Assembly: GCA_024137785.1 (NCBI GenBank)
Contig: JAHRHZ010000092.1
Span: 563,770-627,769, forward strand
From: Ginglymostoma cirratum
Lineage: Eukaryota
Direction of reading: 5' to 3'
DNA: 64,000 bases
In this document: piece by piece, positions 2,340 through 44,454 of the stretch
Numbering within the stretch: position 1 is the stretch's first letter
How the letters are laid out: every line of letters starts with the position of its first letter
Translations under genes and position numbers: made by a program
The notes under the pieces: generated by a model
The model's input: the letters and a program-made list of their open reading frames with translations, nothing else
Database searches by the model: none
What the model was told of the DNA's origin: nothing

Positions 2340-3270
2340 GACTCCAACGATGTATACCTCTCAATTTTGTAAACCTCTACTAAGTTACACCTCATCTCTC
2401 AATGTTCAAGTGCAAACAAATTAAGTCTGTCCAATATCTCCTCATAGTTAATACGGTCAAAACTAACCAACATCCTGGTAAACTGTTCCTGTAGTCTCTC
2501 CAAAGCCTTCACATCCTTCTGGTATTACGGTGGCTAGAATTGTATACAATATTCAAAATGTGGCCAAACTGAAGTTTTACACAGCAGCAACATGATGTGC
2601 TAATTTTTATAATCAATGCCCTAACCGATGAAGGCAAGCATGCTATATCCTTCTTGACCACCTTATCCACTTATATTGCCACTTTCAGGGAACTGTGGAC
2701 CTGTAAGGCTAAATCCCTCTATGTTGATGTTACTAAGAGTTCTGCAATTTATTGTATAGTTCCCTCCTGCATTAGAACTTCCAAAATGCTATCACCTCAC
2801 ATTTTTCAGATGCCTAAGTCTCCACCCTATCTATATCCTGCTGTATCTTCTAGCAATCCTTTTCCCTATCCACAGCTCCCTCAATCTTTTTGTGATCCAC
2901 AAATTTAGTAATCAGGCAACCTGTGTTTTCCTCCATATCATTTATACATGTATTACAAACAACAGGGGTCCCTGCACTGATTCCTGTGGAATACCAGGGT
3001 AACAAATCTCCAGCCAGAAAAATACCCTTCCATTGTTATTCTCTATCTGCTATGATTAAGTCAGTTCTGTCACCTTCTCACCAGCTCACGCATATCACAT
3101 ATTACTTCACCTTTTGATTCAGCCTGCCAACTCTTACCAAAGATCTTGCTAAACCCGATATAGACAACATCTACCACCCTACACGCATCAATCACCTTTG
3201 TCACTTCTACAAAAAAACTTAATTTGTGAGATATAAACTTCCCTGCAGAAGTCCATGCTGCCTATTGTTA
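2340..3270 (-). mobile_element. Decayed CR1 LINE fragment (continues ~4450-5620)
   Basis: Nucleotide similarity to the CR1 at 36285-38030 (catcctggtaaa, gatgaaggcaagcatg, ccctgcagaagtccatgc). Confidence 0.75.
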
Positions 3271-3808: not shown

Positions 3809-6040
3809 ACAGGATTTCAGAAGTCTCACACCTTTACAAACGCTTCCCACCTAATCTTATTTGAGACAGTTTCCTCATACACCTGTGCAGGAAGATAAAG
3901 ATTTACAAAGTTTATACCTAATTCTAGTCGGGCAGGAAGTTTTAAGGCAGTGTCTGCATACCTTTGTGGAAGCAGATAAAGAGCATTAAATTATAGAGAA
4001 TATAGAAATCAAAGGGATGTTATCCCAATAACATCTCACTCCAATATAGTAACACACCATAAACACATCCGTGCAAAGGCAAATTCAGTAATATAGATTG
4101 TCTCACATGCAATCTCACAGTGGAAGAGAACCCCAACTTTTAGCTGTAATAGAGAGGAATAAGATTTTCCACATCCAGCTTCAAGACCCCAGCAACAGCT
4201 ACTGAAATCTAAACTAAATATTCTGGTTCTGTGGGAGCTTGACCCCACATATTCAGGCTCCTTCTATTATTCCAACTTTAAAAAAACCCAAGGCCTCACA
4301 AGTTGTTTATTTTATTTGATCTGAGCAGACTGCTATATACCTCTGTCTAAACCTTTCCTCAATAAAAGGACAAAATACATCACTAATAAGTCCATACTTT
4401 TCAAAATGAGAAAATCCCATGCCTAAGAATCTTCTCCAATAGTTTCCCTGTCACTAATGTAAGGCTCAACGGCCTGTAATTTTTCAGATTATCCCTATTG
4501 CCCTTCTTAAGTAAAGGAACATTATGCTGGCTATTCTTCAGTCCCCTGGGACCTCACCTGTGATTAAACAGTATACAAAGATTTCATACGAGGCCTCAAC
4601 AATTTCCTCACCTGCCTCCCTCGCATTTGGGATAGAATCCATTAGGTCCTTGAGGACTTGTTTACCTTAATGCATTTAAAAACACATATTGACAAGCCCC
4701 AGAAGATCAATATACCCCTCTTGAGGCTCACCATCCACCATGTCCTTCTCCTTTGTGAATACCAATGGAAAGTATTTGGTAAGGACCTCACACACTTCTG
4801 TTGGCTCCATACATAAGGCTCCATACATCCTTTGTCCTTGAATGGACCTGCTCTAATTCTAGCTACCCTCTTGTTCCTTATCTACGTATAAAACATCTTG
4901 GGACTTTCCTTTATCCTGTTGGCCAAAGACATTTTATGGCCCCTTTTACCCCTCTTAATTTGTTGTTTGAGTTCTTTCCTGCCATCTTTCTCTTCTTTGT
5001 GGGGTCTTTAATTTATCTCTCAATTTCTCTTGTACCTAAGGTTCCTAAAACTTACCACCCTTATTGCACAGGAACATGCTGGTCCTGAACTCTATTTCAT
5101 TTAACCTTTAAAAGATTCCCACTTGCTAGATTTACCTTCAAACAACTGCCTCAGTGTATATTCCCCAGTTCCTGCCTTATATTGTTGTAATTAGCCTTCC
5201 CCCAATTTAGTACTTTCTCTTGACAACTATTCTTATCCATACCCACTTAAACTCACAGAATGAGGGATACTGTTCCCAAAATGCTCCTGCACTGAATTTT
5301 CAATCATATGGCCAGCATCATTCTTCATTACCAGATTTAGCATGGCCCTTCCCTAGTCGTTTCAAGCATCTATCCTGATTACACCTAACAAATCCCCCTC
5401 CCCCCTCATCCAAGCCCCTGGCACGAAGCCAGTCGCAGTCAATATCGAAGTTAAAATCACTCACCAGAGCAATCCTGTTGCCACGCTTTTTTCCACAATC
5501 TGTCCACATATCTGTTCCTCTACCACCCACTAGCTATTGAGAGGTATGTAGTTCAATCCCATCTAAGTGATTTGACCCTTCCTATTCCTGAGTTCTATCT
5601 ATATGGCCTTTGGTTATTGTTTTAGTGAATATGAGCCAATCCCTCCACTCTATTAGAGATAGTAGGAGCTGCAGATGCTGGAGAATCTGAGATAACAAGG
5701 TGTAGAGCTGGATGAACACAGCAGGGCCAAACAGCATCTGAGGAGCAGGAAGGCTGACGTTTCGGGCCTAGACCCTTCTTCAGAAATTTTTCTGAAACTT
5801 CTGAAGCTCTACACCCTCCACTGAATTGTCAGATCCACCAACCTTCAAGGTGTCTTGACAACTTCGGACTGCCGGCAGCATCCAATCAGGGAGTGAGGGG
5901 CGGGGAGGATGTTTGGTTGGGGCGGGGCTATCAATGTGAGTAAAGGGTCTGGGCTCGGCTCTCAATCAGAAGTGCACTGTCTGTTGAATGTTGTCTCACT
6001 AGTGATAAAGATTGCTAAAAAGCGAACCTTGAAGTGGAAG

Positions 6041-6560
6041 ATGTATCCGTTGTTAGTTCTGTTCATCGTATTTTACTGTAAGGGACTTTCTAATTTACAA
6101 TTATATTTCAACCTCTAATTTTCTTTCAACTGGCTATCCTTCACTCCTGCTCTCATTCTATTTCTCTAGATTCCTCTTTTTTCATTTGTTACTTTCTTTT
6201 TCCTTTCTCGACTTTGTCCCCATTTACTGACCTCTTCCTCTCCCCGTCTTTTCCTTAGATGTGAAATCACAGTATATCCACCAGAACCCCGCCGCCGTCT
6301 CCAAATTTCCCGAAGAGGGTGTGAACCTGCAATGCAGCGTGGAGGGGAGCAGCAGTAGTAGTCTCTACTTGTACTGGTACAGACAGTCCCCCGGAAAAGA
6401 ACTAAAGCTGATGTTTTACTCCAGTACAGCACAATACGTGAATCCACAGAAGCCGGTGGACGGTTTCACCGCCGAGCGACCGAGTAGCTACGAGTTCTAC
6501 CTGAAGGCCTCCAGCCTGTGGGTGAATCACTCGGCCGTGTATTACTGCGCCTGGAGTCTT
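6041..6560 (+). CDS. TRBV: TCR beta V gene segment V1 (TRBV30-like family), apparently functional; leader exon 6041-6077, intron 6078-6258, V exon 6259-6560
   Basis: Leader ATG TAT CCG TTG...TAC T|gtaag (MYPLLVLFIVFY); acceptor ttccttag|AT; open V-set domain with Cys (LQCSV), YWYRQ and YYCAWS; followed by a perfect 23-RSS. Confidence 0.93.
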
Positions 6561-6599
6561 CACAGTGACTCGGAGAGAGGAAGCAGCTCAACAAAAACC
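6561..6599 (+). promoter_or_regulatory. 23-bp-spacer recombination signal sequence of V1
   Basis: CACAGTG + 23 nt (actcggagagaggaagcagctca) + ACAAAAACC. Confidence 0.97.
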
Positions 6600-9500
6600 C
6601 CAAAGGCGAAAGGAAGCAACTTTTATTGTCAAAACCTGATGGTCAGAAATGCAACAGCAACCAGAGACAACTGTTTATACAATCGTTAAGTGTTCTCAGG
6701 TGCTCCTATTTTAAGGGGAAATAATCCAGCCCAAAATATGTTTTCCACTTCCCCCGACACCAGCACCTGCCACTGATCAGCTGCTATCTCTTTCATCACA
6801 ACTGAAGTTCTCATCTTGCTGCCGTGCTGATTGAAGTCTGTGTATTCTGTTCTAATTCCTAATAATTATCCCCCAGAGTCTTAATGAAGCGGATTCACTC
6901 CCAACCTTTCTCAATGTCAGATCAGCTTTCTCATGCTATCGCCTGGAGCTCAGGCTGTAAGGCCCTGAAGGCTTTACATTTCAAATACAATGGATTTAAT
7001 GCTTGGATATGCCACATCATCGATACCAGTCATGCATGATCTTGTAAGCACATCCTTTATTCAAATAAAAACCTTCCAAACTTCAATCTTTGCCTGAGCA
7101 ACTTGCAGCCTTGAATTGTGATAAACTCCATGCTAAATTATTTTGTTCTTTACACATTTTGCAATAATGATAAAGTGAAAGAATGAATAGAACGAGAAAA
7201 AAAAGAAACTGAAAATTTAAAAAATGGTGTAGATCAAGTGAGATAGTTTATTTTTCTTCTCAGAACTGTTTGTGTAATCCAGCAGCAACTTCAAAGTAGT
7301 AAAGCATCTCTGGCCATGAACGTTAACGGATAAAGTTTGACACAGAACTTCCTAAGAACGGGCGACCAAAGCTCGATAAGAGACATTGGTCTTAAGGAGC
7401 ATCTTAAAAGGAGAACAAAAGAGGGGGAAGGTTTCGAAAGCCAAATCCAGAGTTTAGGGCTGAGACACTCGAAAGCACAGCCATTGACCATGGAGCAAAG
7501 AAAACCGAGGTTATCCAAAATGCTGGAATTGCCAGATTGCAACATTCTCTGAAGGTTTTAGAGCTAGTGGAGGTGACAGTGATAGGGAGAGACAAGACCC
7601 ATGTGGGGGCTTTAAGATAATAAGATGAGAATTTTAAAAGTTGAGGCATGCTGTACTCGGAGATCAGTGAACCATGGTCTGACGGATGAACAGCTTTGGA
7701 TGAGCTGAAAAGCGGATACAAACAAAGTCTAGTCAAAGCCTGGATGTAACAAACTACGGCTGAAGGTTTCAGCAGCAGATGGGTTGAGGCAGGGTCAGAA
7801 ATGCAACAGCAACCAGAGACAACTGTTTATACAACAGCTTCCCTTGGGAATATACCAATAATATTAACCACATGCTTCACTTTAAGTCAGTTATTTGAAA
7901 GCAATAAATTGCATTTAAATATTTAGTTACAGCATAAAAATGAGGTTGTAGTCAATTGGTTATAGTCTGTTCCAACACACTCTATTCAAGCTTACTGTAA
8001 AAGGCAGCTTACACAGATCTCTTCTATAAAAAGTGAAACATCACCTTCGGTGTGAAGTGACATTGGACAACACTTCTCAGGAGTAATAAATTATCCTTAT
8101 TCTGTTCGCACATAACCACAAGTAGTAAATGTGCTCCATTGTGTATTTCTAACTTAGTACAAACCACCTAACTTCAGAATTCTTTATGGTTCTTTTATTC
8201 AGACTTCAGGGGTCAGTCGATAGCACATGGACTGTAATGGTTCAAGAAGGCAGCTCACCACCACCTTCTCAACTAGGGACGGGCAATAATTACTGGCCAG
8301 CCACTGGTGCCTATTTCCCACAAATGTAACAAGGATGCTTAGCTCCACGGAATTCCATTGCAACATTCTGAAATGAGGTGAGCCGTTGGAACAAGCCAAG
8401 TATTCCAAAATGCTACTGTCTTCATGGTAGACAAAAGGAATCTCTAGTTACATCAATCAAGCTGGATCAATAACAATGATTAGGCATGTTCACATTCTTT
8501 GTTAATACACGGTACTGTCTCATACTTTTGGTAGAATCATGGGCAACAAGGAAGAGGATAGAAAGTAATTACGTGTAGAGATACTGTCAGAACAAAGAAC
8601 AGTACAGCACAGGAACAGGCCCTTCAATTCTGAGCCAACACTCGATGCCTTTACAGCTAAAACCTTTTGCTGTCCGCTGTCTGTACCCCTCTGTCCCCTG
8701 CTTCTTTGTGTATGCGTCAAGATGACTGTCAAAAGTTGCAGTTGCATCCGTCTCCGCCACGTTCTCTAGTAACGCATTCCAGCACTGACCATCCTGTGTT
8801 TTAAATCAAAAAAACTTGCCTCTCACATTTCCTTTAAACTTACCCCTTTTACCTTAAACTTCTGTCCCCCTAGTGATTAACATTTCTGGCCGGGGAAGAA
8901 CTATCCGTTCCATTCATGCCTGTCAATTTTGTGAACTTTTGGCAGATTGCCCTTCATCCTTCGACGTTCAGTACCCTCCAAGGCAGGCCAGTGAATCATT
9001 TCTACACCCTGTCAAAGTCGGTAGTGTGGTAGCGTTGAGGGTGTATATGAAATTGAAAACGATCAAGCTCTCAACTACCAAGAAAGTTTGAACAGGTTCG
9101 TATCGGTTGAAAAGCCGGAAACTGTTTCAAATTCTGAAGTGGGTTCAATAGTTTAGGCTCTGCGGAACTTCTAAACTCGTCGTCACGGCCGTCCTTTCTA
9201 AGAGTAAATCCAACTGGAAAAAGTCAACAGAAACATTTTTTTTTAACCGAGATAGTAGTAAGAATGTGGAATTCGTGGAATTCGCAGAATCATAGAATGG
9301 ATTCGGAACAAGGCATTGAAAATAAGCGACTGACAGAAAATGGAAGGGAAAATACCAGGACGATTTAAAATTATTTTTCTATTGGTGCAACAGAGGGCGC
9401 TCTAGCAACATGAAATTCACCTGGGGTTGGTTCAGCTTTAACCGTTTAACGTAGAAATATAATTACTAGGAATAGAGTAAGCCATTCAGATCTTTAAAGC

Positions 9501-10723: not shown

Positions 10724-10763
10724 CACAGTGACTCAAGAGAAACGGAGCAGCTCAACAAAAACC
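10724..10763 (+). promoter_or_regulatory. RSS of V2 with 24-bp spacer
   Basis: CACAGTG + 24 nt (actcaagagaaacggagcagctca) + ACAAAAACC. Confidence 0.92.
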
Positions 10764-10945
10764 CCAAAGATAGCAAGAAGCAGCTGTCAACGATACCGCT
10801 CATACTTTCATCCTGCTGAGGAAGCTCTTGCATCCTAAAGCCGCAGCTCTCTCCCCTCCCCATTTAGAGAGACAGGACAGCTGTACAACCGGAGATTTTT
10901 TTTTAAAAGATGACGTTACAGCAATGATGCGAAAGTTGAGGGATT

Positions 10946-14516: not shown

Positions 14517-14991
14517 ATGTATCTGTTACTGGGCATTATGATCATATTTCACTGTAAGAAGGTTTACAAACGATATTTTCTGTTGTTCAGCTTTACTTTC
14601 TCCTTCGCTTTTTACGTTTCTCTCATACTCTCACCTCCCTTTGGTTCTTCAACGTTGACCTAAATGTTCCAATTTACTAGTTTTGTTTGTCCTAGTTGCC
14701 GACTCGCAGACGATCCAACAAACTCCCGCAGCTGTCTCCAGCAATCCTTGGGAGAGAGTAGAACTGAATTGCACTGTGCTGGGTACCAGCGATCCTTACA
14801 TTTACTGGTACAGGCAACTCCCGGGGAAAGAGCCGCAGCTGATGTTTCACTCCCTTACTGCACGAAATGTGATTCCTAAGAAGCCGGTGGACGGTTTTAC
14901 CGCCTCCAGACCGAGTGACTCTGAGTTCTACCTGAAGACCTCCAGCCTGTGGCTAAATCACTCGGGCATGTACTACTGCGCCTGGAGTGTT
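14517..14991 (+). CDS. TRBV: TCR beta V segment V3 (TRBV30-like); leader 14517-14553, V exon 14696-14991
   Basis: Leader MYLLLGIMIIFH T|gtaag; acceptor gtcctag|TT; open frame DSQTIQQTP...LNCTV...YWYRQ...NHSGMYYCAWSV. Confidence 0.93.
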
Positions 14992-15030
14992 CACAGTGAC
15001 TCAGAGAGATGAAGTAGTTCAACAAAAACC
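14992..15030 (+). promoter_or_regulatory. 23-RSS of V3
   Basis: CACAGTG + 23 nt + ACAAAAACC. Confidence 0.97.
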
Positions 15031-15419
15031 CCAAAATTGGCAGGAAACAGCTGTTTTCGTCAAAACAGTGCTTTGCCTTGATCCGCTGTATTTGCTTGCA
15101 GAGCGAACATGTTCTTCAATGTGAGAGAAGAGTTACTGGAAGCTAAGTTGAGGAATACTGAGAAGCGTGAAAAGGGAACTGCGCAAGGAGGTTCCCAGAA
15201 ACGAGAAACTACAAGAAAGACTCAAAGTGATCAATTCATTTGTGTTGAAACTGCAACATTGAGAACAAAACCTAAAAAGCTCTTTATAATCATGAAAAGA
15301 TTGCTTTCAGAAAAGTTTGTGATCTGGAAGGCCAGGATCAGAATAAGTATGAGTCACAAATAATCCTGAAAGGAAATCCAGGAGAAACACGGCGAGTGTA
15401 AAATAAAGGGATATAAAAT

Positions 15420-17220: not shown

Positions 17221-17680
17221 ATGCATCTGTTAGTGAGTCTCATAATTTTATTTCGATGTGTGATATTTTTATCAGTTCCTTTCTTAAAGTTATAATTTGT
17301 TTCATTTATCTTTCTCCAACTACTTGACTGATCTTCTCTTCTCTCCATCTCTTCCTCAGACGGGAACTCAGCGACAGTCCATCCGACACCCCCATCCGTT
17401 CCCAATGTTGTTCAGGAGAGAGGGGAACTGAAGTGCATTGTAGAGTTGGCCAGCAATGATTATATATACTGGTACATACAATACCCGGGGAACGAGCTAT
17501 AGCTGATGCTTTACTCCAGTACTGTCGAGTATTTGATTCCAGAGTGGACGATTTCACCGCTGAGCGACCAAATACTTCTGAGACCAATCTGAAGTCCTCC
17601 AGCCTCCGAGCGAATCACTCGGCCGTATTTTCCTGCACCCGGACACTAACTCAGAGAGAGGGTGCAGCTCAACAAAAACT
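17221..17680 (+). pseudogene. TRBV: TRBV30-like pseudogene V4 (leader 17221-17257, V exon from 17360)
   Basis: Leader MHLLVSLIILFR; ELKCIV...YIYWYIQYPG; in-frame TAG, frameshift before VDDFTAERP, ends NHSAVFSC; heptamer decayed (gacacta) but family spacer and ACAAAAACT nonamer retained. Confidence 0.9.
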
Positions 17681-19139
17681 GACAAAGACAACAGGAAAAA
17701 TATGACAGAAGCAGACACAGCTTTGTTCACCTTTTGAAGAGTGACCGTTTCGATTACAATGAGAATAGGCTGCTCGAATAAATAAAACAAAATGTTGATA
17801 TAAAGGCATTGGAATTGGATTAATAAAGATGAGTCCGCAACTGAAAGTCGATGACTGTTGTCGAGTGGAACTGTATTTTTTTTTCTCTGCAGAATCAGCA
17901 GATGGCTCTCGAGGTCACATGTCTCGTCCATGGTTCCTCAAGGCCATGGATAGAGGAGGAGGCTATTCAGCTGGGACGGAAAGAAAGACAATTCGTTTTT
18001 CATGGATTTATCCTGGAAACGTGGGAACTGCTCAGCTTTTCTTGAAGTTATTACTCAGGAATATCAGGAGATTATTTAACTATTTGCATCTATGAAGGGA
18101 TGGATTCTATGCCTTGAGATTTTTCAGTAATCGTGGCAGATCCAGTTCTTTGCTCTTTCTCCCCGTCATATTTATTACTTCGCGAAGTGTTACAAGCAAA
18201 ATCTACCAGCATGAAGGTTGAAACCTTCAATTAAACCCACAACCTCGTGGGCATTCTGCGGGTGCAGACTTCCACTTTGTATGATCTTTACTCTTATTTG
18301 TCTGTATGGTATTTAACTGCAATTAGTCTCTAAAATGCTGCTGTTTGAGTCCTAGCTGTTTCCAATTTAAAATAAAAACTGCAAGTTCAGAAATTTCTGG
18401 CCACCAAACTGGCAGTTGCACGCTTGAATAACACTTTGTAATGGCTAAATGATCTAGCTGAATTCTCTGAAGAGTTTCAGATATTACTGCTCCTGGTATC
18501 ACTAATTACTCTTCGAAAATCATTGATGACAGTAAGGTATCAACTCAGCTCCAATTAGTGGCAGAAGATGTAAGATTTTATTCTACAGTCTGGGCAACTC
18601 CATCGAGAACTTAAGATACATTCTACATACTTATCAAGATATATTCTACATCACAGTTTTGAGCTTCCTGAAATTTGTACTTTTCTTTCTGTAGATGGTA
18701 ATTCTCTTGTGACATCTGAGATTTAGACTTCAATTTCCGAAATGAAGTCGAAATCTGTTTTCACTCTGCAATTACTATTACCTTGAATGGTGTCTGGTAC
18801 TTCACCTGCACGGATTCAATGGCTGAGCCACACCTCGTCAGCCTCGATTGAATTCAGAGGTGGCGTCTTAGTTGTCTCTATTTTGTATTCAGCAGTGACC
18901 AATGGTTTATAGTCGGTTTCAACCTTAAACAATAATTAGAGTTGTTGGTTAGTTCGCCGATATGACTGGTTTTCATGCAAAAGTTTCATATCCCTCGTCG
19001 GTGACAGCACCATCAGTCCGTTGAAGGGTTGGACAGCACTGACGATGTCACCTAGAAATCAAACGAAACGTTTGCATGAAAACCACTCAGCTCCGCGAAC
19101 CAACCAACAACTCCAACCACAAACCGGGCTACAGATCTT

Positions 19140-20220: not shown

Positions 20221-23054
20221 TATTGGTCGTGGTGTTCTGGGGTTGATTGGGATCCCAGGAGCTTGGAGTTTATGCAAACTCCCACTTCTTATTCAACATT
20301 GGAGTTGCAATCTGACGTAATCTCCTGACTGCCCTAACTCTTCAGTCATGTTCTCCAAGGTAGTGCCATGTCGTTCATGTGACATATTACACCATTAATG
20401 CACACCCATCAGTTTGTAGGAATGCTTTGGCAAATTCCAGGGGCATATGCTATTTAAAAGTGGTTGACTTCTTTAATTGATATCACCTTAAACGGTGAGA
20501 CAAAGTTAGTCAGATTTCTGGAATCTGCATTGGGTTGTTGCTGGAAACAACTGTTGTATCCATTTTGGTGAATAGTATTCTCACCTAGATTTTCACCTAT
20601 TGAAGGTCAACCTGCTAAGTCAAAATATGCGTTTAACCAAATAAACAAAACAGCGGACCGTTAGATTTGGCTAAATGTCATTGCTTTTGATTCAGATTAT
20701 TACTGTCCCAGTAGAATTAGGAACTGTAGCCATTACTGAACACTGAACTCTCGAAACTGTAACCGGTGAAATTACACCTTGTCTGAGTCGATAATATTTT
20801 TAGAACTTATACAGAAGTAGATGCGACCTTTGTAGTGTGACAGTGGGTTGGTTTTACATTCTCTCTGAGGCATTGTGATATTCTATCTTCAATTTTCCCA
20901 AATCTATCAACCATCTTGGGAACTCCCTTCCAAAATCACGTCCTCTATCTGCACCTGTCATTCCTGTGAATTAACTTTATCTTTAAGCATATATTCCTTA
21001 ATTAAGCAGGGGAACATTTCTGGATGTCAAACTGAGACTCAGTTGTTTCTTTTGAATCTGACCTTCGATGTGATATGGCCCTCTGAGTTAATTTCCTCCA
21101 AATCCCCGTTATTTAATTGAGGAACGTTGCAATGTTTTCTTTTAAAGCCACGGAAACTGGCCTGATAACACCGAGACACTGTCTGCTGACCAGCTTAACA
21201 CACTTTAGAATTTATTTCCAGAATTGTTTATTTCTCCCATAAATATTGAACTTTTAAGCGTTTATGGCGTTTCCACTTCATAGACCTGCTTTGGTTTCAC
21301 AGACATTGTCTGTTCATTAACTTCAACACACTGGACCTGTTGTACTCTGAAACCCTTAGAAAGTAAAGTGGTCAACCCTCTATCTGGTCTGGGTTGGAAA
21401 TAGGGATTCCAACGCAGTGGAGATTCTAGTCACTGTCTGCTTCATGGAATGTGTTGGGAATTGAGGTCCACGTAAAGGCGAATTTTCCTATTTTTCCTAT
21501 TCAGCATGAGATATAATTTCACTGTTGCTAGAGCAGTAACTGGCTTTCTAAACTTCCAAATCCAGATGAAGATAGAGCGCAGACTGTGTGAAGACTCAGG
21601 GAAGAATTTCTTACACTTAAGATGGAGAATAGGATATTTTCTTCAACGTACTTTAATGAGAACGACCATAGTCTGTGCCAACAACCTGTTTATTCGCTAG
21701 CAGCTTTGTCATAGGCTACGTATTCTTCTTTGTATTGTAAATAATTAATTTACTTAATGTATTGCTATTGTCGGCTAAATGTATTAAATGCATCTCTAAA
21801 CGTATTGTCTACTTTATACTAGCTAAATTGTTGCTTCTTATGCTTAAACTATCCAGAAATTCTTTACACACAAACACAGAGAGAGAGAGGAGGGTGGGGT
21901 GAGGGGGGAGAGAGAGAATTATTTACAAGTAGCCGGCTGCATAGATCTCGGGCATTGTGGTCACGAGCTCGCAAAACCTAACGCAGGATCTTATCAGAAA
22001 ATGTCAAGCTTTGAAAGGTCTAATAAGAAAGGTATTGCGTCCCCCGCCCCAACTTCGCTCCCCCACCCCAGCGGACTTCTCTCACATCCATAAAACACAA
22101 TTGAATGCATTAGTTCCTTTGGCTAAGCAACTTATTTGCAAGCCACGCAGAGCGAGTTCATTTTGGGTACCAGCTGAGGTCAGCATGACGGGCTCACTCC
22201 TCGACCGACGGTTGAATGAGAGACTACTCTGTAGTATTATGGAAACATTCAATCAGAACATAATCGGATCATAATCGCTGTTTCCACAGTGAACCTGAAC
22301 TTTCCCCTTCAACTGATTCGTCATGTGCCTTTCAATATTTGTGTGGGCGGTGGCGTAGCGGTAATGTCACCAGTAATCCAGAAGCCCAGGTTAATATTCT
22401 GGGGACAAAAACAGAAGTTGCTGGAAAAGCTCAGTAGGTCTGGCAGCATCCGTGAAGAAAACAAAATCAAAGTTAACGTTTCGGGTCCCGTGACCCTTCC
22501 TCAGAATATTCTGGGAACATCGTTTCGATGGTGAAATTTTAAATGAATTTAAATCGGAATAAAAAGCAACCTTCGTAGCAACCATGTGAGCAGTATCGAT
22601 TGTCGCAAAAATGTCTTCTCTAATGAATTCCCTTCAGGCAAAAAAATCTGCGTCCCTTACCTGGTCTGGCCTACATATGACTCCAGACCCAGAGCCATGT
22701 TGCAAATAGAAAATGCTAGAGCTCACAGCGGGTCAGGCAATATCCATGGAGATAGAGAGCAAGCTAAAGTTTCGAGTCTAGACGACTTTTCATCTGAGCA
22801 ATATGACTGACTCTTAACTGTCCTTTGGGTAGTTATGGATGGGCAATAAATACCGCCCACATTCCAAGCACGAATTTTTAAAAAAAGTCGCGTTTCTCCC
22901 AATAAACCAATCGGAGATCAAGGGGCGGTGCTGATATTGGGAAAAGCCGAATCTATTGGGAGTAGCTGGATTGTCAATCAAGGAGCGAGGGGTGGAGCAC
23001 TATATTTCAATACAGTTTCGCAAATGCGATTGTTTAAACAGAAATCTTGCAGTG

Positions 23055-23093
23055 CACAGTGACTCAGACAGAGGGAGCAGCTCAGCAAAAACC
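23055..23093 (+). promoter_or_regulatory. Orphan V-type 23-RSS with no leader or V exon upstream
   Basis: CACAGTG + actcagacagagggagcagctca (23 nt, family spacer) + GCAAAAACC; downstream flank resembles other V flanks; upstream is promoter-like DNA only. Confidence 0.92.
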
Positions 23094-23929
23094 ATTAAGG
23101 TTGCACGAAACAGGTGAGAACGCGAAAACAGGTGTTGCGTTCGGTTTCTCTTCGACGCAGTGAATGCGTTTTGACAGAAAAGGAAGTGCGGTAACATTAA
23201 ATGGTGAGCGAATAGATAGTGGGGATGATTAACAAGGATTCGCCTGAATTTGAGAGTTTTGGTCCCTGTAGACAGTGTGCCATTCCACAGAATTCAACCA
23301 TCAACAGATGGCGCTGGAAAAGCACGAAAATGACCCGTGCCGAACACACAGTTAAAGGGGAACACAGGTACACAGAAAGATATTCAGTCCTTGTGAACTG
23401 ATAATGTAAGGAAAGAAAGAGGCCGCTTGTTTTCCCTGAATTTGTTGTTCAGGGTCTGGAAGAAGCCATTGAAGTTGAAGGGGCTGCCAGGAGAAAGAAA
23501 TTCTTGTTTTATTCGTACATACGATGTGGGCGACTCTGGCTAGGCCAGCATTTATCACTCATTTGATTGAAGCCATTCCTGGAGTTGTTACACAGGACTG
23601 CGAGCAATCTATTCAGCCGTTAGCGTCTGAGAAGGAGGCGATACAGGACCTTGATACTGTTCAGTCATACATTTAGGTCATGTGCCATCATGAATGATTG
23701 GGTTCTTAGCTTCACTTGAGGCCTTTCGACGCTATATCTGAATGTACGAGTACAGCAAAAATGTTCCAGTTTGATTTGGTGTTGAAACCTCCGAGCATCA
23801 CCACGATATGTGCCTCATAATAACATCCCAAAGAGCCTGGTTTAGACTTGTTGATATTTCAGATGTTTCAGACACAGTTCCCCTCCTCCCATCCGCCCCC
23901 GCCCCCTCCCACCCTCCTCCCCCTCAGAT

Positions 23930-25230
23930 ACATAGAACATAGGACAGTACAGCACAGGAGCAAGCCCTTCGACCCACGAAATACCAAATTAAACTAATCC
24001 CTTCTGCCTGCTCATGGTTCCTTGATGAACCCACCATTCCTGGCTTATTCATGTGCTTCTCTCAAAGACCCTTAAACTCTCCTATCGTATCTGCCTCCAC
24101 TACAATCCCCGGCAGCGTCCAGACACCTATAGCTGTCTGTTTAAAAAAAAAACTTGGCTGTCATATCTCCTTTGAACTTTCCCTTCTCACCTTAAATGAA
24201 TGCCCCCTAGCATTTGACATTTGAAGGCTGGGGGAAAAAAGATTCTGCCAACACTATTTATGTATCTGCTAATTTTATACTGCTATCAGGTCTCCCCTCA
24301 GCCTACACCGCTCCAGAGAAAGCAACCCGAGTTTGCCCAGCCTCTCCTTTTAGCTCATAATCTCTAATCTAGGCAGCATCCTGGTAAACCAGGATTGGCC
24401 TCTCCAAAGCCTCCTCATCTGCGATAGGGTTAGGGTTAGGGTTCCTGTAATGTGGCAAGCAGAATTGAAAACAATACAAAACGTGCGGCCTGACCAAGTT
24501 TTATAAAGCTGAAAAATGACTCTTGTACTGAATTTACCGACCATTAAAGACAAGCATGCCATACGCCTTCTTTAACACCCTATCTACTTGTGAGGTCACT
24601 TTCAGGGAGCTATAGACTAGGACCCCAAGATCCCTCTGGACATCAATGTTGTTAAGGGCCTTGCCATTAACTGTACACTTTCCCAGAAATCACACGACAC
24701 CAGTTTACAGTGCAGTAGGTTTATTTGAAATCACAAGCTTTCGAAGCGTAGCCCTTCGTCACCTGATTTCAAATAAACCTGTTGGACTGTAACCTGGTGT
24801 CGTGAGAATTCTGACTTTGTCCATCCCAGTCCAACACTGGTACCTCCACATCCTGTATACTTTGCCTTAACATTTGATCTCCCAAAGCGCAGAACTATCC
24901 GAATTAAACTCCACCTGCCATTCCTCCGTCCATATCTGCAACTGGTCTATATCCCACTGTATCCTTAACATTGTCCACAAATCTCGCGGTCTTTGTGTCG
25001 TCTGCAAATTTACTAACCCAACCATCTTTTCTTCATCATTTTCACCATCATCGTTTTCTTCCAAGTCATTTATATCAATCACAAACAACAGTGATCCCTG
25101 CGGAACACCACTAGTCACGGACCTCCAGCCAGAAAAATACCTATCCATCACTACTTTCTGTTTCTTATGGACAAGGCAATTCTGAATCCAAACGGCCAAA
25201 TCACCGTGAAACTGATGCATCCTATACCTG
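23930..25230 (-). mobile_element. CR1 LINE 3' fragment
   Basis: WRSVTSGVPQGS, WQVEFN; CR1 tail catagaacatagg. Confidence 0.85.
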
Positions 25231-26906: not shown

Positions 26907-28264
26907 ATCGTCTCTGGCTGGGGCTGTCCATCATATTTCACCGTAAGCTTTTGTTTTCAAACGACAATTCGCATTCTGAACTCTTATTTCTCTATTTTTC
27001 TAATATATTGTTGTATATTTTATTTCTGTATTTTTCTATTCTTTTCCCCAAGAATGCGTACTTAAGAAAACCCGAAAGAACTGCGGACGCTGTAAATCAG
27101 GACCAAAACAAGAGTTGGTGGAAAAGCTCTGTAGGTCTGGCAGCAACTGTGAAGAAACAAATCAGAGTTAACGTTTCGGGTCCGGGGACCCTTCCTCAGA
27201 ACTGTTGGTTGCTCTGGACAACGTCGGTTTATATGCAGAAAATAGGAAGGGGGTGGAGTAGAGAGTAAACAATAGGATAAAGGATAGAGCCCAAAGAGAA
27301 AGAAGAGCATAGACAAAGGAATTGATAACGATCTGGCTAGGAGAGTGAATGGTTGTTAGTGGGGACTGTCAGTGACTAACAATAGGTAGTGTGTAATGGC
27401 AGGCTACGTGATAACAAGGCCTGATATTTGGGGTAGGGGGCTAAGACATTGGAGTGTTTAGGCTCTAAAATTATTGAACTGGGTATTGATTCTGGAGGGC
27501 TGCAGGGTCCACAAGCGGAAAATGAGCTGTTGGTCCTCCAGCTTGCATGAGCTTCGCTGGAACACTGCAGCAAGCCTGAGACAGAGGGAGGGTGGTGTGT
27601 TAAACAGGCCAGGGAGCAGGGTGGTGTGTTAAATTGGCAGGCAACTGGAAGCTCAGGATCTTTGTACCTAGGTACCTTGCTGCCTAAGATAGCGCTGTTA
27701 AGTGGTTAGTTGTAAACTCTTCACTGTACTCGTGTGAGCATACGTGCCAATAAAGCTAATTCTAAATTGTCAAATTCTTTATTGAACACCTAACATTCGT
27801 TTACACAGGATTCCCTCCTCCTGCTCACTTTTTGTCCTCTTTCTATTTCTCTTAATTTAACTTTCTTTTCCCTCCTTCTTGTTTCTCCACGGTTCATGGT
27901 GTTGTTATTTTCCGATGTCTTCCTATCCCTGCCTTTTCTACAACTGTGAGGTCGCACACTTTGCCAGTTTCCCTTCGCCGTCTCCAAATGACCTGGGAAT
28001 AGAATGAACTGCAGTGTACATATGAGAGGAGTGGTGCCTTTGATGTTGACGAAAGCAGACAATCCTTGGGAACGGTGCTGCACTTCTCGTTTCACTTTGG
28101 TGCTGCATATCATGTGAATCCAGAGAGCCAGTGGATGGTTTCACCGCCGAGCGACCAACAGGTTCCACGTTCTAGTTGAAGACCGCACGCCTCGAGGTGA
28201 TTCATTCGGCCGTTGATTATTGTGTTCACAGTGACAGAGAGATGTGAGCAGGTCAACAAAAACT
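26907..28264 (+). pseudogene. TRBV: TRBV30-like pseudogene V6; decayed leader ~26907-26942, intron expanded by repeat insertions, V exon ~27943-28226, RSS 28227-28264
   Basis: Leader remnant ...atcatatttcacc|gtaag; V remnants gaactgcagtgt, gtggatggtttcaccgccgagcgacc, cattcggccg; stops and frameshifts; CACAGTG + 22 nt + ACAAAAACT. Confidence 0.85.
27066..27662 (-). mobile_element. Penelope 3' fragment (second family) in the V6 intron; short relatives at 22404-22504 and 61489-61648
   Basis: LEDQQLIFRLWTLQPSRINTQFNNF on the minus strand; end aaccgaaagaactgcgga; relatives have TSDs aatattctggg and ctatcaacat. Confidence 0.8.
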
Positions 28265-28879
28265 CCAAAGATGGCATAAATATCTGTTTAATTAAAAAAA
28301 CATACATTACTATGTGTTCACAGGGAATGCTAACAGAAGACATAAGCGAAGTCTTCAAACTAGGGTTTTAAGAAGGATCCCGACCCGAATCATTGACTTT
28401 CCTACTCTGATGCTGCCTTACCTACTGTGCTCCTCCAGCTCCAGACTGTGTTGACTCTGACTCCAGCATCTGCAGTTCCTATTATCTCTTTAAAATTCTG
28501 ACATGGAATGCAAGGGGTAAACGGTCAGCTGCACATAAATTCAGAAGTAGACGTTATAAAGATGAAATGGGAAGACGTTGACATATTGGGATTGTGTCTA
28601 GATCACTGTATCGGAATTGGAATTTAAAACAATGGTGTTAAACATATACAAGGCAATTGTGCACCATTGTCTCATCTCCATTAGACCATAAGACATAGAG
28701 CCAGAAGTAGCCATTCAGCTCATTCAGTCTGCTCCGCCATTCAATGAGGTCATGGCTTATCTGCTTACTTTGTTGCCTTCTCTCATAACCCTTACTGAAA
28801 TATTGTGTATCTTAGCCTTGAGTGTACGGAATGACCCAGCTTCAATAGTCCTCCGTGGCAAACAATTCCCTAGATACAT

Positions 28880-32374: not shown

Positions 32375-32774
32375 NNNNNNNNNNNNNNNNNNNNNNNNNN
32401 NNNNNNNNNNNNNNNNNNNNNNNNNNNNNNNNNNNNNNNNNNNNNNNNNNNNNNNNNNNNNNNNNNNNNNNNNNNNNNNNNNNNNNNNNNNNNNNNNNNN
32501 NNNNNNNNNNNNNNNNNNNNNNNNNNNNNNNNNNNNNNNNNNNNNNNNNNNNNNNNNNNNNNNNNNNNNNNNNNNNNNNNNNNNNNNNNNNNNNNNNNNN
32601 NNNNNNNNNNNNNNNNNNNNNNNNNNNNNNNNNNNNNNNNNNNNNNNNNNNNNNNNNNNNNNNNNNNNNNNNNNNNNNNNNNNNNNNNNNNNNNNNNNNN
32701 NNNNNNNNNNNNNNNNNNNNNNNNNNNNNNNNNNNNNNNNNNNNNNNNNNNNNNNNNNNNNNNNNNNNNNNNNN
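32375..32774. other. Assembly gap (400 N)
   Basis: N run; right side begins inside a PLE terminus. Confidence 1.
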
Positions 32775-32885: not shown

Positions 32886-33036
32886 TTCCTGCTCCTATGA
32901 TGCTGCTTGACCTGCTGTGTTCATCCTGCCCCATGCTTGTTAGCGGGAGACTGTTAGGGTTCAGACATTACAATTATCAGGCAAGGTACATTTTTTAAAA
33001 TGTGAATGGAACAAGAAGATTGAGTGCAGAACTGAT

Positions 33037-33163
33037 CGGTATTGCCTGTACCAGTGCATGTGAGGATCGCTGGTGCTTAGTAAGTTGCTCTTCAGTTCCA
33101 TTCCTCTCTGAGGATTGCTGGACACCGCTCCTGGAGTCTGGCGCATAGTCTTCGAATCAATGC
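33037..33163 (-). pseudogene. TRBV: Inverted, 3'-truncated TRBV30-like fragment V8
   Basis: Minus strand: acceptor gtcccag, then IDSKTMRQTPGAVSSNPQRGMELKSNLLSTSDPHMHWYRQY (aligns to V3/V7 FR1-FR2, Cys lost); no 3' half and no RSS. Confidence 0.85.
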
Positions 33164-35409
33164 CTGGGACAAAGACAAAGACAAAGAACTGGTACAAGGG
33201 ACACATGTTTAAGGTGAAAGGCAGGAGGTTTAGACAGCACTTGAGGAAAGAAAATCACCCAGAGGGTGTTAGGGAACTGAACAGTTAATAGTTAACGTAT
33301 AGTTTGAGTTATAGGGACAAGTTGAACTGGCTGGGGCTTTTTTCCCTGAAGCGTTGAAGGCCGAGGGGTGACCTTACAGAAGTTTACAAAGTTCTCAGGG
33401 GCGTGGATAGGCTGAATAGACAAGGTCGTTTTCCTAGGGTGGGATTGCATTTAAGGAGCAGTGGCACCTATCTTTCAGATATAGATGAAGATGGTGAGAG
33501 GCAAAGATTTAAAAAGGACCTGAGGGACATTTTTTTCACGCAGAAGGTGGTGCGTGTAGGGTGATGGGTACAATAACAACATTTCAAAGGTATCTGGATG
33601 GGTGTATGAATAGGAAGGATTTAGATGGACATGGATCAAATGCTGGCAAATGGGATTATGTTAGATTGGGATGAATGGTCAGCGTGGAAGAGTTGGACAA
33701 AAGGGTCTGTTTCTATGCTGTATGAGTCTATAACTATGGCTCCATGACTCTTCATTTTCTGGATGAACTCAATCCATTCCTGCTGGAGTTATCATTGCAT
33801 TTAAGGACAAGTGGCACCTATCTTTCAGATAGAGATGGAGATGGTACAAATCAATCTAAGCTATGCAACAAAAATAGAGAAGGAAGAAGAAAACAATGAT
33901 GAAAAAAGAGAATGGCTGGGGAAAGAACAATAGAGATGTGGGATAATGGAATGACTGATAACCTCTGAGAAGCTAAAATTCCGTTTATTTCTTCAAATGT
34001 ACTCTAGATGACAGAGGAGCAGGAAAGTCGGGTTTCAGGTCGAGACCCTTCATCAGGACTCTGCTGTTTCTTCAGCTCCACATCGTATCGACTCTGACCC
34101 TCTGAGGCTGCCTGACCTGTTGTGCTCCTTCAGCTCCGCACTGTATTCCAGCATCTGCAGTTCTTGCTATCTTCAGTAAAGATCAATGTCAGTTTTGAAA
34201 TGTAAAATTGTCCCAACTACCCACAACCTTTTGCCTGGTGATAGTTCCAGATTTTCATCATTTTCTATGCAGCAAAATACTCCTGATATCACCACCATTG
34301 AAAGACGTGGTTATTTCTGTGAAGTATCGTCTCGTGGTTCTGTGTGGATTTTGCAAATACTCCCTGTGTCTGTGTGGGTTTCCATCAGGTGCTATGGTTT
34401 CCGCCCAGAGTCCAAAGATGTGCAAGTTAAGTAGATTAAACGTAGAAACATAGAAGATAGGAGCAGAGGAGGCTATTTGGCCCTTAGACCCTGCTCCACC
34501 ATTCTTCACCATCGTAGCTGATCGTCCAACCCAATAGCCTAATCCTGATTTCTCCCCATAACCTTTGATTCCATTCGCACCAAGTGCTATATTTTGTCAC
34601 CCCTTGAATATATTCAGTGTTCTGGCATCAACTACTTCCTGTGGTAATAATTTCACAGGGTCACCACTCTTTGGATGAAGAAAGTTGCCTCATCTCCGTC
34701 CTAAATCGTCTACTCTGAATCCTCATATTGTGATCCCTGGTTTTGGATACACCAACCACCGGGAACATCTTCCCTGCATCTACCCTGTCCAGTCCTAATA
34801 GACAGGGTAGATGTAGCCATGGTAACTTACAGCGTAGTGCCCAGCAATATGCAGGCTAGGTGGGTTAACTATGGTAAAAGTGGGGATAGGGAGGGCTTGC
34901 TGTGCCTGGGTAGGGAGCTCTTCAGAGAGTCAATGCAGTATTGGTGGCAAAATGGCCAATTTCTGTACTGTAGGGATTTTATTCCATGATTATTTCTATG
35001 TTCTGCTTTCTGAAATGCTTCAAAGTCCTTGTTTTGTTAATACATCAATATTTAATACCGAAGAAAGACAAAGAAATGTTGGTTCACTGTTCATCATGGT
35101 TCCTCTCTTTAGGGCAAGGTTTAGTTTTAGTGAATGAGTTTTGCCACTCCTTGTAAGTCTAATTCATTTTTCTGGGGAATGTGCCCAGGAGTGATGTTCC
35201 TGATGGAAACTGCAGAGTTTTCAACAACTGAAGTAGAACAAACTCCGTTTTGTTTTCCAATTTCATTCAATTAAAAATGCTAGCATTTGATTATAACTTT
35301 ATATTATAGTACTTTACAACATTTTTGCGCATGACTATCAGTTTTTAATAATTAGTAAATCTGAACAACTATAGTTCTTCACAGAATATACTCCGCTAAG
35401 ACAATAAGT

Positions 35410-43089: not shown

Positions 43090-43303
43090 TTTCCTGCAAA
43101 GGGAGAGGAACTGCAGTGGAGCAAGGAGGAGCGCAGAAGCGGCTACATTACCGGTACGGCCAACAGTGCATGTTTAGCTCCGATGATACACATATAGTGG
43201 ACCCGAAGGAAGAGGTGGACAGTTAGACCTCCGAACAACCGATCGGCAACCCGTTTAACCTGAAGTCCACCAGGTCAAGTCAGAGCATTCGGCTGGAGTC
43301 TTC
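43090..43303 (+). pseudogene. Highly decayed TRBV30-like relic V10
   Basis: Remnants gaactgcagtgg (ELQC), tacattaccggtacggccaa (YIYWYRQ), atgtttagctcc (MFYS), gtggacccgaag...gtggac, aacctgaagtcc, cattcggc..tggagtctt; CCAATCA upstream at 42895; RSS not recognisable. Confidence 0.7.
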
Positions 43304-44454
43304 AAAATCAGTCCGCGTAATTGACAAAAAAAGAAGCTCCAAAATGGCGTACAAAAATTGTTCGAAGTTTCAGCTGGTTTTGTTGTTACAGAGGTGAAGC
43401 GTTTATGACAATACGAAATGATTAAGGCTTAGAATAAGAGCGAGACAGTGAAAATACAGATATATTGGGGAAAGTTCAAAGAAAGATGAACAAAAATAAA
43501 CAAAACAGAGGAGCTACATAGTTCAGGAATGATTGCCAGTTGAGAAACAGAACTTTCTGCTCAGCGTCGTAACTTTGGGAAGCGAGAGGAAGACATTCAG
43601 CTCCGGTTGGGCCCCTAGACAGGGGGGGCAAGGAGGCCATTCAGTTCCCTCTGACTCTGTTAGATATCTGCTAGACACCCCTACATCCTCTAAAGTCACG
43701 TACACAGGAACAAGCTCGAAGGACCCCTTGCACCGTCGCAGAAGGGGGCAAACTTGACCACCTGAGGATCTGACAGATATTTTCAAATCAACCCGTTTAG
43801 AGATGCTGTTACACAACTTTGGAGCAGGTAGGGCTTGAACCCAAGCCTCCTGACTCAGAGGTAGGGAAGTTACCATTGCACCATAAAAGTCCTTCTGAGG
43901 CTGTTACACGGGAACTGGAGGCCGAGCCAGCATCTGTGAGTCTACTACACAGGAATGTCAGGCGGGCTATTGTGACACTAATCTTGAACAGGATGTCATT
44001 TCATCCTTGTCCTTCTATTCAGTCCCAACATGACTCATGAGTCTTAACTCAATTTACCCACTATATTCATTAACAGTTGATATGATCATTTGACAATAAT
44101 ATCCCAATCCCAGAACTGAATGCCCCATCGGAAACATAACGTCACAAGACTGTCGAGGGGAGAGAGTTCTCGATTTCCGTTAATCTTGGCCTGAGGATGC
44201 GATTTCTGACTTCATACCTGCATTTACAACCTTGAAGATAAGAGACATTTCCCCGTGTCATGGGAACGTTCGCCTGAGGTATTACTTCCTTTCTTTACCA
44301 TAGAAACATTAAAAAAAAGGATTAACCGTCGGCCATCGAGCCCTCAAACCTCACCACTATTCAAGGTGATCGCATCTGATCTCTTATGCCAATGCTATAC
44401 TTCTGCTCTCTCGTCATATCCTTCGATGCCTTTAGTACAAAGAACAGTACAGCA

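What the first reader, a model, noticed from the sequence alone, without database searches (positions are those of the whole stretch)
22900..23125. V-less promoter + RSS whose junction looks like a RAG signal joint fixed in the germline
Seen: a V-family promoter (CCAATC 22907, GC box, TATATTT 23001) runs directly into an intact family 23-RSS at 23055 with its usual downstream flank. In V4, V9 and V11 the TATA-like motif lies ~85-100 bp before the ATG, so leader, intron and V exon (~0.5 kb) are missing exactly up to the first heptamer base. The junction is TGCAGTG|CACAGTG (GTGCAC, the ApaLI site diagnostic of signal joints). Read on the minus strand, the left side is a cryptic 12-RSS: heptamer CACTGCA (23054-23048), 12-nt spacer, nonamer AAACAATCG (23035-23027, 5/9 consensus). 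Established: sharks carry germline-joined Ig genes attributed to RAG activity in germ cells. Inference: RAG paired a cryptic 12-RSS in the 5' UTR with the V 23-RSS, excised the V and left a heritable signal joint, i.e. RAG-driven V-gene loss at a TCR locus. The leftover promoter-RSS could still recombine as a decoy. Alternative: microhomology deletion at CAC (the V1 5' region natively contains agtgcac near 5971).
Basis: partly seen in the sequence, partly recalled or inferred. Interest (0 to 1): 0.85.

Follow-up and report, generated by a model that had tools for sequence, protein, structure and literature searches.

The report
Shark TCR V gene deletion scar
In a nurse-shark T-cell-receptor V-gene array, one unit has lost about 0.5 kb (leader, intron and V exon), so its promoter and 5' untranslated leader run straight into its intact recombination signal; the break lies exactly where the V(D)J recombinase cuts, which makes a germ-line recombinase accident the leading but unproven explanation.

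Summary
An intact family 23-RSS (23055-93) has its usual flank to ~23122 and no V exon upstream.

The 155 nt before it are not generic promoter motifs. They align collinearly with the promoter and 5'UTR of the paralogue whose RSS is at 6561 ("V6561"): 66% identity, z 5.3, 0/1000 shuffles.

- **Left breakpoint:** it maps 4 nt before the start codon, so the 5'UTR is almost complete.
- **Right breakpoint:** it is the first heptamer base.
- **What is missing:** about 0.5 kb, comprising leader, intron and V exon.

Two alternatives fail. A "V 3' remnant" reading has no homology beyond 9 nt.

A blunt GTG|CAC fusion at the heptamer border is what a chromosome-retained RAG signal joint would look like. 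The evidence for it is limited:
- The cryptic 12-RSS is ordinary: 4.6% of CAC sites score as well.
- Relatives carry CAAG before the ATG, so 2-4 nt of microhomology (CA/CACA) cannot be excluded.
- No reads of the source animal and no orthologue could be obtained, so germ-line status and the ancestral state are unverified.

An earlier, unchecked scan note reports a second such scar in this locus.

My odds are RAG signal joint ~0.45, ordinary deletion ~0.40, artefact or other ~0.15.

The parts
22336..22887 (.). Block of high-copy transposon fragments directly upstream of the promoter remnant: a SINE-like piece at 22402-22514, and a second element at 22626-22857 that carries a nested piece at 22712-22794.
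   Evidence: Self-BLAST finds copies at 61522, 27100, 48342-48458 and 30621. Depth in contigs of related species is 10^4 to 10^6 over 22336-22923 and falls to 0-8 from 22924.
22888..23054 (+). Single-copy V-family promoter plus nearly complete 5'UTR, homologous to that of the V whose RSS is at 6561. CCAAT/GC motifs lie at 22907-22927 and 22974-22994; a TATA-like TATATTT lies at 23001-23007.
   Evidence: Global alignment of 22900-23054 to 5872-6036 gives 66% identity, z 5.3, 0/1000 shuffles. The last 30 nt match the V6561 5'UTR ending at -5 in 19/30 positions ungapped (null P < 5e-5). Motif count is 4 against 0.03 expected.
23027..23054 (-). Proposed cryptic 12-RSS, read on the minus strand: heptamer CACTGCA (23054-23048), 12-nt spacer (23047-23036), nonamer AAACAATCG (23035-23027).
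   Evidence: The sequence is as stated. Heptamer 4/7 and nonamer 5/9 are reached or exceeded by 4.6% of the 1804 CAC sites in the window. Nonamer positions 4-6 (C-A-A) do not fit the purine-A/T-purine rule of PMC12711392.
23054..23055 (.). Deletion junction GTG|CAC (ApaLI site GTGCAC). On the left is position -5 of the 5'UTR; on the right is the first heptamer base.
   Evidence: In V6561 the homologous GTG is followed by GAAG and then ATG.
23055..23093 (+). Intact V-family 23-RSS: heptamer 23055-23061, spacer 23062-23084, nonamer 23085-23093.
   Evidence: Pattern search with 0 mismatches. It is 35/39 identical to the RSSs at 6561 and 31895.
23094..23122 (+). Family-typical flank downstream of the RSS.
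   Evidence: BLAST: 23055-23122 matches 10724-10792 at 78% and 23052-23116 matches 14989-15053 at 77%.
5872..6599 (+). Closest intact paralogue, used as a proxy for the undeleted state: promoter and 5'UTR 5872-6040, ATG 6041, V exon 6264-6560, RSS 6561-6599.
   Evidence: The interval equivalent to what is missing here is 6037-6560, or 524 bp; it is 468-524 bp across the six family units measured.

Best explanation
A TCR-beta-type V unit of the V6561 lineage lost about 0.5 kb: the last ~4 nt of the 5'UTR, the leader exon, the intron and the whole V exon. Its promoter and 5'UTR are now joined bluntly to the first base of its own 23-RSS.

The most likely single mechanism is RAG1/2 acting in a germ-line cell. 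RAG would have synapsed the V 23-RSS with a weak, essentially CAC-only cryptic 12-type site 0.5 kb upstream on the opposite strand. It cut both sites, released the V as a fragment with coding ends, and left the two blunt signal ends to be ligated precisely into a chromosome-retained signal joint (GTG|CAC).

Shown here: the deletion, both breakpoints mapped by paralogue homology, and the intact RSS. Inferred: RAG authorship, germ-line timing, and any present activity of the remnant, such as accessibility from its promoter or use as a non-productive recombination partner.
For: - **Right breakpoint.** It is exactly the first heptamer base, and family homology starts there.
- **Left side is native 5'UTR.** It runs up to a GTG that the closest paralogue also has at the same place (TTGAAGTG|GAAG ATG). 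The anchored match is 8/9 and 19/30, with null P < 5e-5.
- **No microhomology against the paralogue.** With V6561 as the ancestral proxy there are no shared bases at the junction and no inserted bases, as expected for a precise signal joint.
- **Geometry.** The signals point away from each other, the 12/23 pairing is possible (the 23-spaced alternative nonamer on the left is 1/9 by eye), and the sites are 0.5 kb apart.
- **A V-remnant reading is excluded.** The match is 7/9, but only 10/30 beyond that.
- **Precedent in this species.** Germ-line RAG-like joining is documented for nurse shark NS4 light-chain genes (PMC2193156). Germ-line signal joints were postulated but not evidenced (PMC2193153).
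- **Weak sites can be used.** Cryptic sites in mouse Tcrb are used even when RSS resemblance is poor (bioRxiv 10.64898/2026.09.01.748595).
- **Possible second case.** An earlier, unchecked scan note (s1-879516) reports another own-RSS-to-inverted-heptamer scar in a V of the same locus.
- **Rough odds (my inference).** A generic deletion that leaves a lone RSS would be exact and also GTG-flanked in well under 1% of cases.
Against: - **The cryptic 12-RSS is ordinary.** 4.6% of CAC sites score as well. Its nonamer fails the position 4-6 rule. The homologous site in V6561 is weaker still (heptamer 3/7, nonamer 3/9).
- **Microhomology is possible.** Three of seven family members have CAAG at -4..-1, and one has CACAAG. 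The ancestor could therefore have read GTG-CA(CA)-, giving 2-4 nt of microhomology with CACAGTG. The ATG region even aligns column by column with the heptamer.
- **No independent check.** Germ-line status and the ancestral sequence are unverified.
- **No TCR precedent.** I know of no documented germ-line RAG event at a TCR locus (own knowledge).
- **Selection bias.** The case was picked out by a reader who was looking for such patterns.
Confidence: 0.45

Rival explanations
1. An ordinary germ-line deletion of about 0.5 kb, by end-joining or replication slippage with 0-4 nt of microhomology (CA or CACA), that happened to end at the heptamer border. RAG played no part. The GTG is simply native 5'UTR sequence.
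For: - Family members carry (C)ACAAG immediately before the ATG, and MAFFT aligns that stretch with the heptamer.
- The cryptic RSS is no better than about 5% of CAC sites.
- Other V pseudogenes in the window carry small deletions near the V end that are not at the RAG cut site: near 28230, at 17640 and near 43270. Generic deletions are therefore common in this array.
- There are many V segments genome-wide and the finding was picked post hoc.
Against: - The closest paralogue has GAAG, not CA, after the GTG. With that proxy there is no microhomology.
- The breakpoint must coincide within 0-4 nt with the heptamer start and also sit right after a GTG. I estimate roughly 1e-4 to 1e-3 per deletion (inference).
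Confidence: 0.4
2. The junction is not a germ-line allele. It would then be an assembly error, or a somatic or rare haplotype captured by the assembler.
For: No sequencing run of the source animal could be laid on the junction. The best runs hold only 5% of the sampled words, all from repeats.
Against: - A clean 0.5-kb loss between unique sequences is not a typical collapse. Paralogues are only 60-75% alike.
- A related species (organism B) holds single-copy pieces matching both sides, 22947-23012 and 23161-23264, so the flanks are real.
- A polyclonal somatic event would not reach consensus (own knowledge).
Confidence: 0.07
3. No deletion took place. In this reading the RSS plus flank was copied or moved next to an unrelated CCAAT-rich sequence, or it is a D-like element or a signal joint with a true D 12-RSS.
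For: The promoter motifs are short. PMC2193153 speculates that D segments arose from germ-line signal joints.
Against: - The left flank is collinear along its full length with a V promoter and 5'UTR, ending 4 nt before where the ATG should be.
- The RSS spacer and flank are V-family.
- No 12-RSS within 3 mismatches of consensus exists anywhere in the window.
Confidence: 0.03

Closest known systems
Germ-line-joined Ig genes of cartilaginous fish (nurse shark NS4 VJ genes; Lee et al. 2000, PMC2193156)
   Same: Same species. Both are heritable changes at an antigen-receptor gene whose breakpoints sit at RSS borders and are attributed to RAG activity in germ cells.
   Different: Those are coding joints: the RSSs were excised and P-nucleotides or trimming are seen at the joint. 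Here the RSS is retained and the coding DNA is lost, which is a signal-joint-type product. The partner is a cryptic site rather than a true RSS. The locus is a TCR locus, not an Ig locus.
Chromosome-retained signal joints in V(D)J recombination (signal-joint-retaining plasmid substrates of the pJH200 type; inversional joining). Recalled from my own knowledge, not tested here.
   Same: Head-to-head heptamer fusion giving GTGCAC, with no loss or addition of bases, and loss of the DNA between two signals that point away from each other.
   Different: Those are somatic or experimental events with two good RSSs. Here one side has only CAC plus a 5/9 nonamer, and RAG dependence is not shown.
Off-target RAG deletions at cryptic RSS or CAC sites in lymphocytes (for example cryptic sites across mouse Tcrb; bioRxiv 10.64898/2026.09.01.748595)
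   Same: A bona fide RSS paired with a weak site whose RSS resemblance is a poor predictor of use, at a TCR-beta locus.
   Different: Those are somatic, low-frequency events detected by PCR. This case would be fixed in, or at least present in, the germ line.
Ordinary V pseudogenes and relics of birth-and-death evolution
   Same: A non-functional member of a tandem V array, with neighbouring pseudogenes at 17.3-17.7, 28.0-28.3, 43.1-43.3 and 47.0-47.4 kb.
   Different: The coding part is missing exactly from -4 of the ATG to the heptamer border, while the promoter, 5'UTR and RSS remain intact.

Membership tests
RAG signal joint | Precise heptamer-to-heptamer fusion (GTG|CAC) without loss or addition of bases | tested here: met
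   The sequence reads TGCAGTG|CACAGTG at 23048-23061. Family homology begins at the first heptamer base. The left side is 5'UTR up to the GTG. There is an ambiguity of 2-4 nt if the ancestor had CA(CA) after the GTG.
RAG signal joint | Two recognisable RSSs that obey the 12/23 rule | tested here: inconclusive
   The 23-RSS is perfect. The 12-type partner has heptamer 4/7 and nonamer 5/9, matched or beaten by 4.6% of CAC sites. Its nonamer lacks the purine-A/T-purine core.
RAG signal joint | Signals oriented so that the signal joint stays on the chromosome | tested here: met
   The left signal reads on the minus strand with its coding side to the right. The V RSS reads on the plus strand with its coding side to the left.
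RAG signal joint | Dependence on RAG1/2, and existence of the reciprocal coding-joint product | not testable with these tools
   This needs a recombination assay. The excised circle is not heritable.
Germ-line (heritable) rearrangement | Present in non-lymphoid or germ-cell DNA and in several individuals or related species | tested here: inconclusive
   No run of the source animal was found. Contigs of a relative cover both flanks but not the junction. The protein route to orthologues was blank or closed.
V-gene promoter of this family | Collinear homology to the region upstream of an intact family V, ending at the start codon | tested here: met
   The match to V6561 5872-6036 is 66% over 144 aligned pairs, z 5.3, 0/1000 shuffles; z is <=1.3 for the other six V promoters. 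Promoter activity itself was not tested.
Microhomology-mediated deletion | Bases shared by both parental sequences at the junction | tested here: inconclusive
   There are none when V6561 (GAAG) is the proxy. There are 2-4 nt (CA/CACA) if the ancestor resembled V14992, V31895 or V40710. The true ancestor is unknown.
TCR-beta V (TRBV) array | V-set exon ending YYCAWS with a 23-RSS, lying in the TRB locus | tested here: met
   Translations, Pfam V-set E 5.5e-13 and the RSS family support the V-exon and RSS features. Assignment to the TRB locus rests on earlier scan notes and was not tested by me. The PDB search did not discriminate chain type.

The most novel reading that the evidence does not exclude
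This would be a heritable RAG signal joint. In a shark germ cell, RAG paired a TRBV 23-RSS with a CAC-only cryptic site at the end of the same gene's 5'UTR, excised the whole V and left a precise signal joint on the chromosome. Together with the second scar noted elsewhere in this locus, it would mean that germ-line RAG activity recurrently deletes V genes and helps drive birth-and-death of TCR V arrays. The remnant would also be a promoter-driven, V-less RSS that can still enter non-productive joins.
Probability: 0.4. Interest if true: 0.75.

Novelty: new variant of a known kind. Interest (0 to 1): 0.52.

Why it matters
Germ-line RAG activity in sharks is so far known from coding joints and one hybrid-joint inversion at Ig loci. 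A germ-line signal joint has only been postulated, as a possible origin of D segments (PMC2193153).

A fixed signal-joint scar at a TCR locus would show three things:
- RAG also removes gene segments in the germ line.
- RAG can use CAC-only sites there.
- RAG is a mutagen that shapes antigen-receptor loci.

It would also give a concrete search image, namely a promoter or 5'UTR fused exactly to a V RSS with GTG|CAC, for a genome-wide and cross-species census. That census would turn the idea into a testable statistic.

If the cause is instead an ordinary deletion, this is just one more V relic.

Tried and rejected
**Readings tested and rejected**
That motif aligns to Q ~22993 (GGAGCAC), 55 nt upstream of the junction.
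- **TGCAGTG as a remnant of the V 3' end TGGAGTG(TT).** The match is 7/9 after a 2-nt trim, but only 10/30 beyond that. The 5'UTR reading gives 8/9 and 19/30.
- **Promoter-like stretch as part of the upstream transposon.** The stretch is single-copy in relatives' contigs, while 22336-22923 is extremely high-copy.
- **Conserved DNA at 23933-25190 as part of the V unit or a D-J-C element.** It is a LINE fragment. It resembles the RT-bearing LINE at 36285-38030, although the short ORF at 24867-25217 alone gave no Pfam hit.
- **D-segment or true 12-RSS partner.** No 12-RSS within 3 mismatches of consensus exists in the window.
- **Other signal-joint-like junctions in the window.** None besides this one.

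**Searches that gave nothing usable**
- **Reads.** The only runs found hold 5% of the sampled words, all repeats from related species. The junction is not resolved, and both read tools are now at their cap.
- **tRNA scan of the SINE.** No hits.
- **PDB sequence search for chain type.** The list was swamped by multi-domain scFv entries and was uninformative.
- **Word searches of earlier findings.** No further cases turned up.
Full report
**What is there**

The window holds a tandem array of V segments on the + strand. Their exons end in YYCAWS and are followed by a conserved 23-RSS. A pattern search finds seven family RSSs, at 6561, 10724, 14992, 23055, 31895, 40710 and 47333, against 1.4 expected. 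No 12-RSS lies within 3 mismatches of consensus. The exons translate as V domains and match Pfam V-set at E 5.5e-13. Further decayed V copies lie at 17.36-17.65, 28.0-28.23, 43.1-43.3 and 60.2-60.4 kb, and on the minus strand at 33.16-32.98 kb. Earlier scan notes place the window in the nurse shark TCR-beta locus. I did not test that assignment independently, and a PDB sequence search did not discriminate chain type.

**The observation**

The RSS at 23055-23093 is intact: CACAGTG, a 23-nt spacer, then GCAAAAACC. It is 35/39 identical to the RSSs at 6561 and 31895. Family homology begins at 23052/23055 and continues to ~23122. tblastn with five family V exons finds no V exon between 18.0 and 28.0 kb. 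The junction reads TGCAGTG|CACAGTG. So the V-less RSS is real.

**What lies upstream**

- 22336-22887 is a mosaic of transposon fragments. Copies occur elsewhere in the window. Contig depth in related sharks is 10^4 to 10^6 there and drops to 0-8 from 22924 onward.
- The remaining 167 nt (22888-23054) are single-copy.
- BLAST found no paralogue for this stretch. However, V promoters in the array are barely alignable with one another: local scores are 16-30 for most pairs (61 for V6561-V14992 and 68 for V17643-V40710) against a self-score of 600.
- A CCAAT/GC composite, AATC..GGAG..GGGG[CT]G, occurs four times in 128 kb of both strands. Two copies lie in bona fide V promoters (5884, 17050) and two lie here (22909, 22976). 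Shuffles give 0.03. The motif was derived post hoc.
- The decisive result is a global alignment of 22900-23054 with the promoter and 5'UTR of the V whose RSS is at 6561 (5872-6036). It gives 95/144 identical pairs and a score z of 5.3. None of 1000 dinucleotide shuffles reaches it, and only 0.14% of random window segments do. The other six V promoters give z <= 1.3.

**Mapping the breakpoints**

- The last 28 nt before the junction are GATTGTTTAAACAGAAATCTTGCAGTG. They match V6561's GATTGCTAAAAAGCGAACCTTGAAGTG, which ends 4 nt before its ATG (GAAG ATG).
- Anchored at the junction and ungapped, the match is 8/9, 10/15 and 19/30. The null P for >=19/30 is below 5e-5.
- The left breakpoint is therefore at -4/-5 of the start codon, and the 5'UTR is nearly complete.
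- The right breakpoint is the first heptamer base.
- The missing interval corresponds to 6037-6560 in V6561, or 524 bp. It is 468-524 bp across the six family units measured.

Two alternatives fail:
- The V 3' end TGGAGTG(TT) matches 7/9 after a 2-nt trim but only 10/30 beyond that, so the left side is not a V remnant.

**Mechanism**

The product is what a RAG deletion would leave when the two signals point away from each other. The intervening DNA, carrying both coding ends, is lost, and the blunt signal ends are joined precisely on the chromosome as GTG|CAC. With V6561 as the proxy for the ancestor there are no inserted bases and no microhomology. The left GTG is native 5'UTR sequence, since V6561 has it at the same place.

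Nurse shark is the species in which germ-line RAG-like joining was documented for NS4 light-chain genes (PMC2193156). The accompanying commentary lists germ-line signal joints as postulated but not supported by data (PMC2193153).

Evidence against giving the cryptic site much weight:
- Heptamer CACTGCA (4/7) with a 12-spaced nonamer AAACAATCG (5/9) is equalled or beaten by 4.6% of the 1804 CAC sites in the window.
- Nonamer positions 4-6 do not fit the purine-A/T-purine core reported for functional nonamers (PMC12711392).
- The homologous site in V6561 is weaker still: heptamer 3/7 and nonamer 3/9 by my reading of the sequence.

On the other hand, RSS resemblance is a poor predictor of which cryptic sites are used in mouse Tcrb (bioRxiv 10.64898/2026.09.01.748595). 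A weak score is therefore not strong evidence against RAG either.

**The main rival**

Three of the seven family members carry CAAG at -4..-1, and one carries CACAAG. MAFFT even aligns the heptamer column by column with this pre-ATG stretch. If the lost V's 5'UTR read ...GCAGTG-CA(CA)AG-ATG, an ordinary end-joining or slippage deletion using 2-4 nt of microhomology with CACAGTG would give the same sequence. Only the undeleted ancestor, as an orthologue or allele, can decide this.

My rough reasoning is inference, not computation. A generic deletion that leaves a lone RSS would be exact to within the microhomology ambiguity and also sit right after a GTG in well under 1% of cases. A RAG event gives this pattern almost always. 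Against that stand a low prior for cryptic-site RAG events becoming fixed and the post-hoc selection of the case. That leaves the two about even, with RAG slightly ahead. An earlier scan note of a second own-RSS-to-inverted-heptamer scar in a V of the same locus (s1-879516) would tip the balance further toward RAG, but I could not check it.

**What could not be done**

- No sequencing run of the source animal was found. The twelve runs listed share 5% of the sampled words, all from repeats.
- Contigs of related species show that one relative (organism B) has single-copy pieces matching 22947-23012, 23161-23264 and 23437-23717. The junction itself is not covered.
- Germ-line status, population frequency, age and any present use of the lone RSS therefore remain untested.

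**Verdict**

This is a V6561-type TRBV unit whose coding part was removed from -4 of the ATG to the heptamer border.

A RAG signal joint fixed in the germ line is the single most likely mechanism (~0.45). An ordinary deletion with short microhomology is nearly as likely (~0.40), and an artefact or another origin takes the rest.

If the RAG reading is true, this is a new variant of a known phenomenon, germ-line RAG activity in sharks. It would be the first signal-joint-type footprint of that activity and the first at a TCR locus.

Noticed in passing
window 17221-17690: This V is a pseudogene. It has an in-frame TAG (~17500) and small deletions that remove the end of the V exon and part of the heptamer (..CCCGGACACTAACTCAG..), while the spacer and nonamer stay family-like. 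Its promoter carries the same CCAATCA..GGAG..GGGGTG motif plus TATATTT.
   Followed up: partly
window 28009-28270 and 43140-43300: Two further decayed V copies. The one at 28 kb keeps an intact heptamer but lacks 9 nt just before the final TT of the exon. The one at 43 kb lacks 16 nt in the YYCA region and has a degenerate RSS. Including the V at 17.6 kb, three pseudogenes with small deletions in the last ~30 nt of the V may be more than chance, but this was not tested.
   Followed up: partly
window 32979-33164 (minus strand), next to the N run 32375-32774: An inverted partial V exon is the only minus-strand family member in the window. It abuts an assembly gap.
   Followed up: no
window 49444-51491 (minus) and 52410-54293 (plus): A GC-rich pair of inverted retroelement copies. 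Their ORFs contain a Cys-rich ..VVYC.CCSRCCLLYIG(E/D).. motif that recalls the GIY-YIG endonuclease of Penelope-like elements (from memory). Pfam gave no hit for the two minus-strand ORFs tested.
   Followed up: partly
window 36285-38030 (minus); fragments at 23933-25220, 8589-8885, 44433-44934, 2424-3069: A LINE with an intact 581-aa ORF (RVT_1, E 1.6e-33). Fragments of the same family are scattered between the V units. They account for the inter-V similarity downstream of the lone RSS.
   Followed up: yes
window 22900-23010: The promoter remnant contains several CCAAT boxes in both orientations (CCCAATA 22897, CCAATC 22907, ATTGGG 22937 and 22956, TCAATCA 22973). It also has a duplicated ~19-nt unit TATTGGGA(A/G)(A/T)AGC(C/T)G(A/G)AT.
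   Followed up: partly
window 5968-5978: The V6561 5' region holds an 8-nt palindrome AGTGCACT, whose core is the signal-joint-like GTGCAC. It aligns to GGAGCACT in the remnant, so it is an old family feature rather than a scar.
   Followed up: partly
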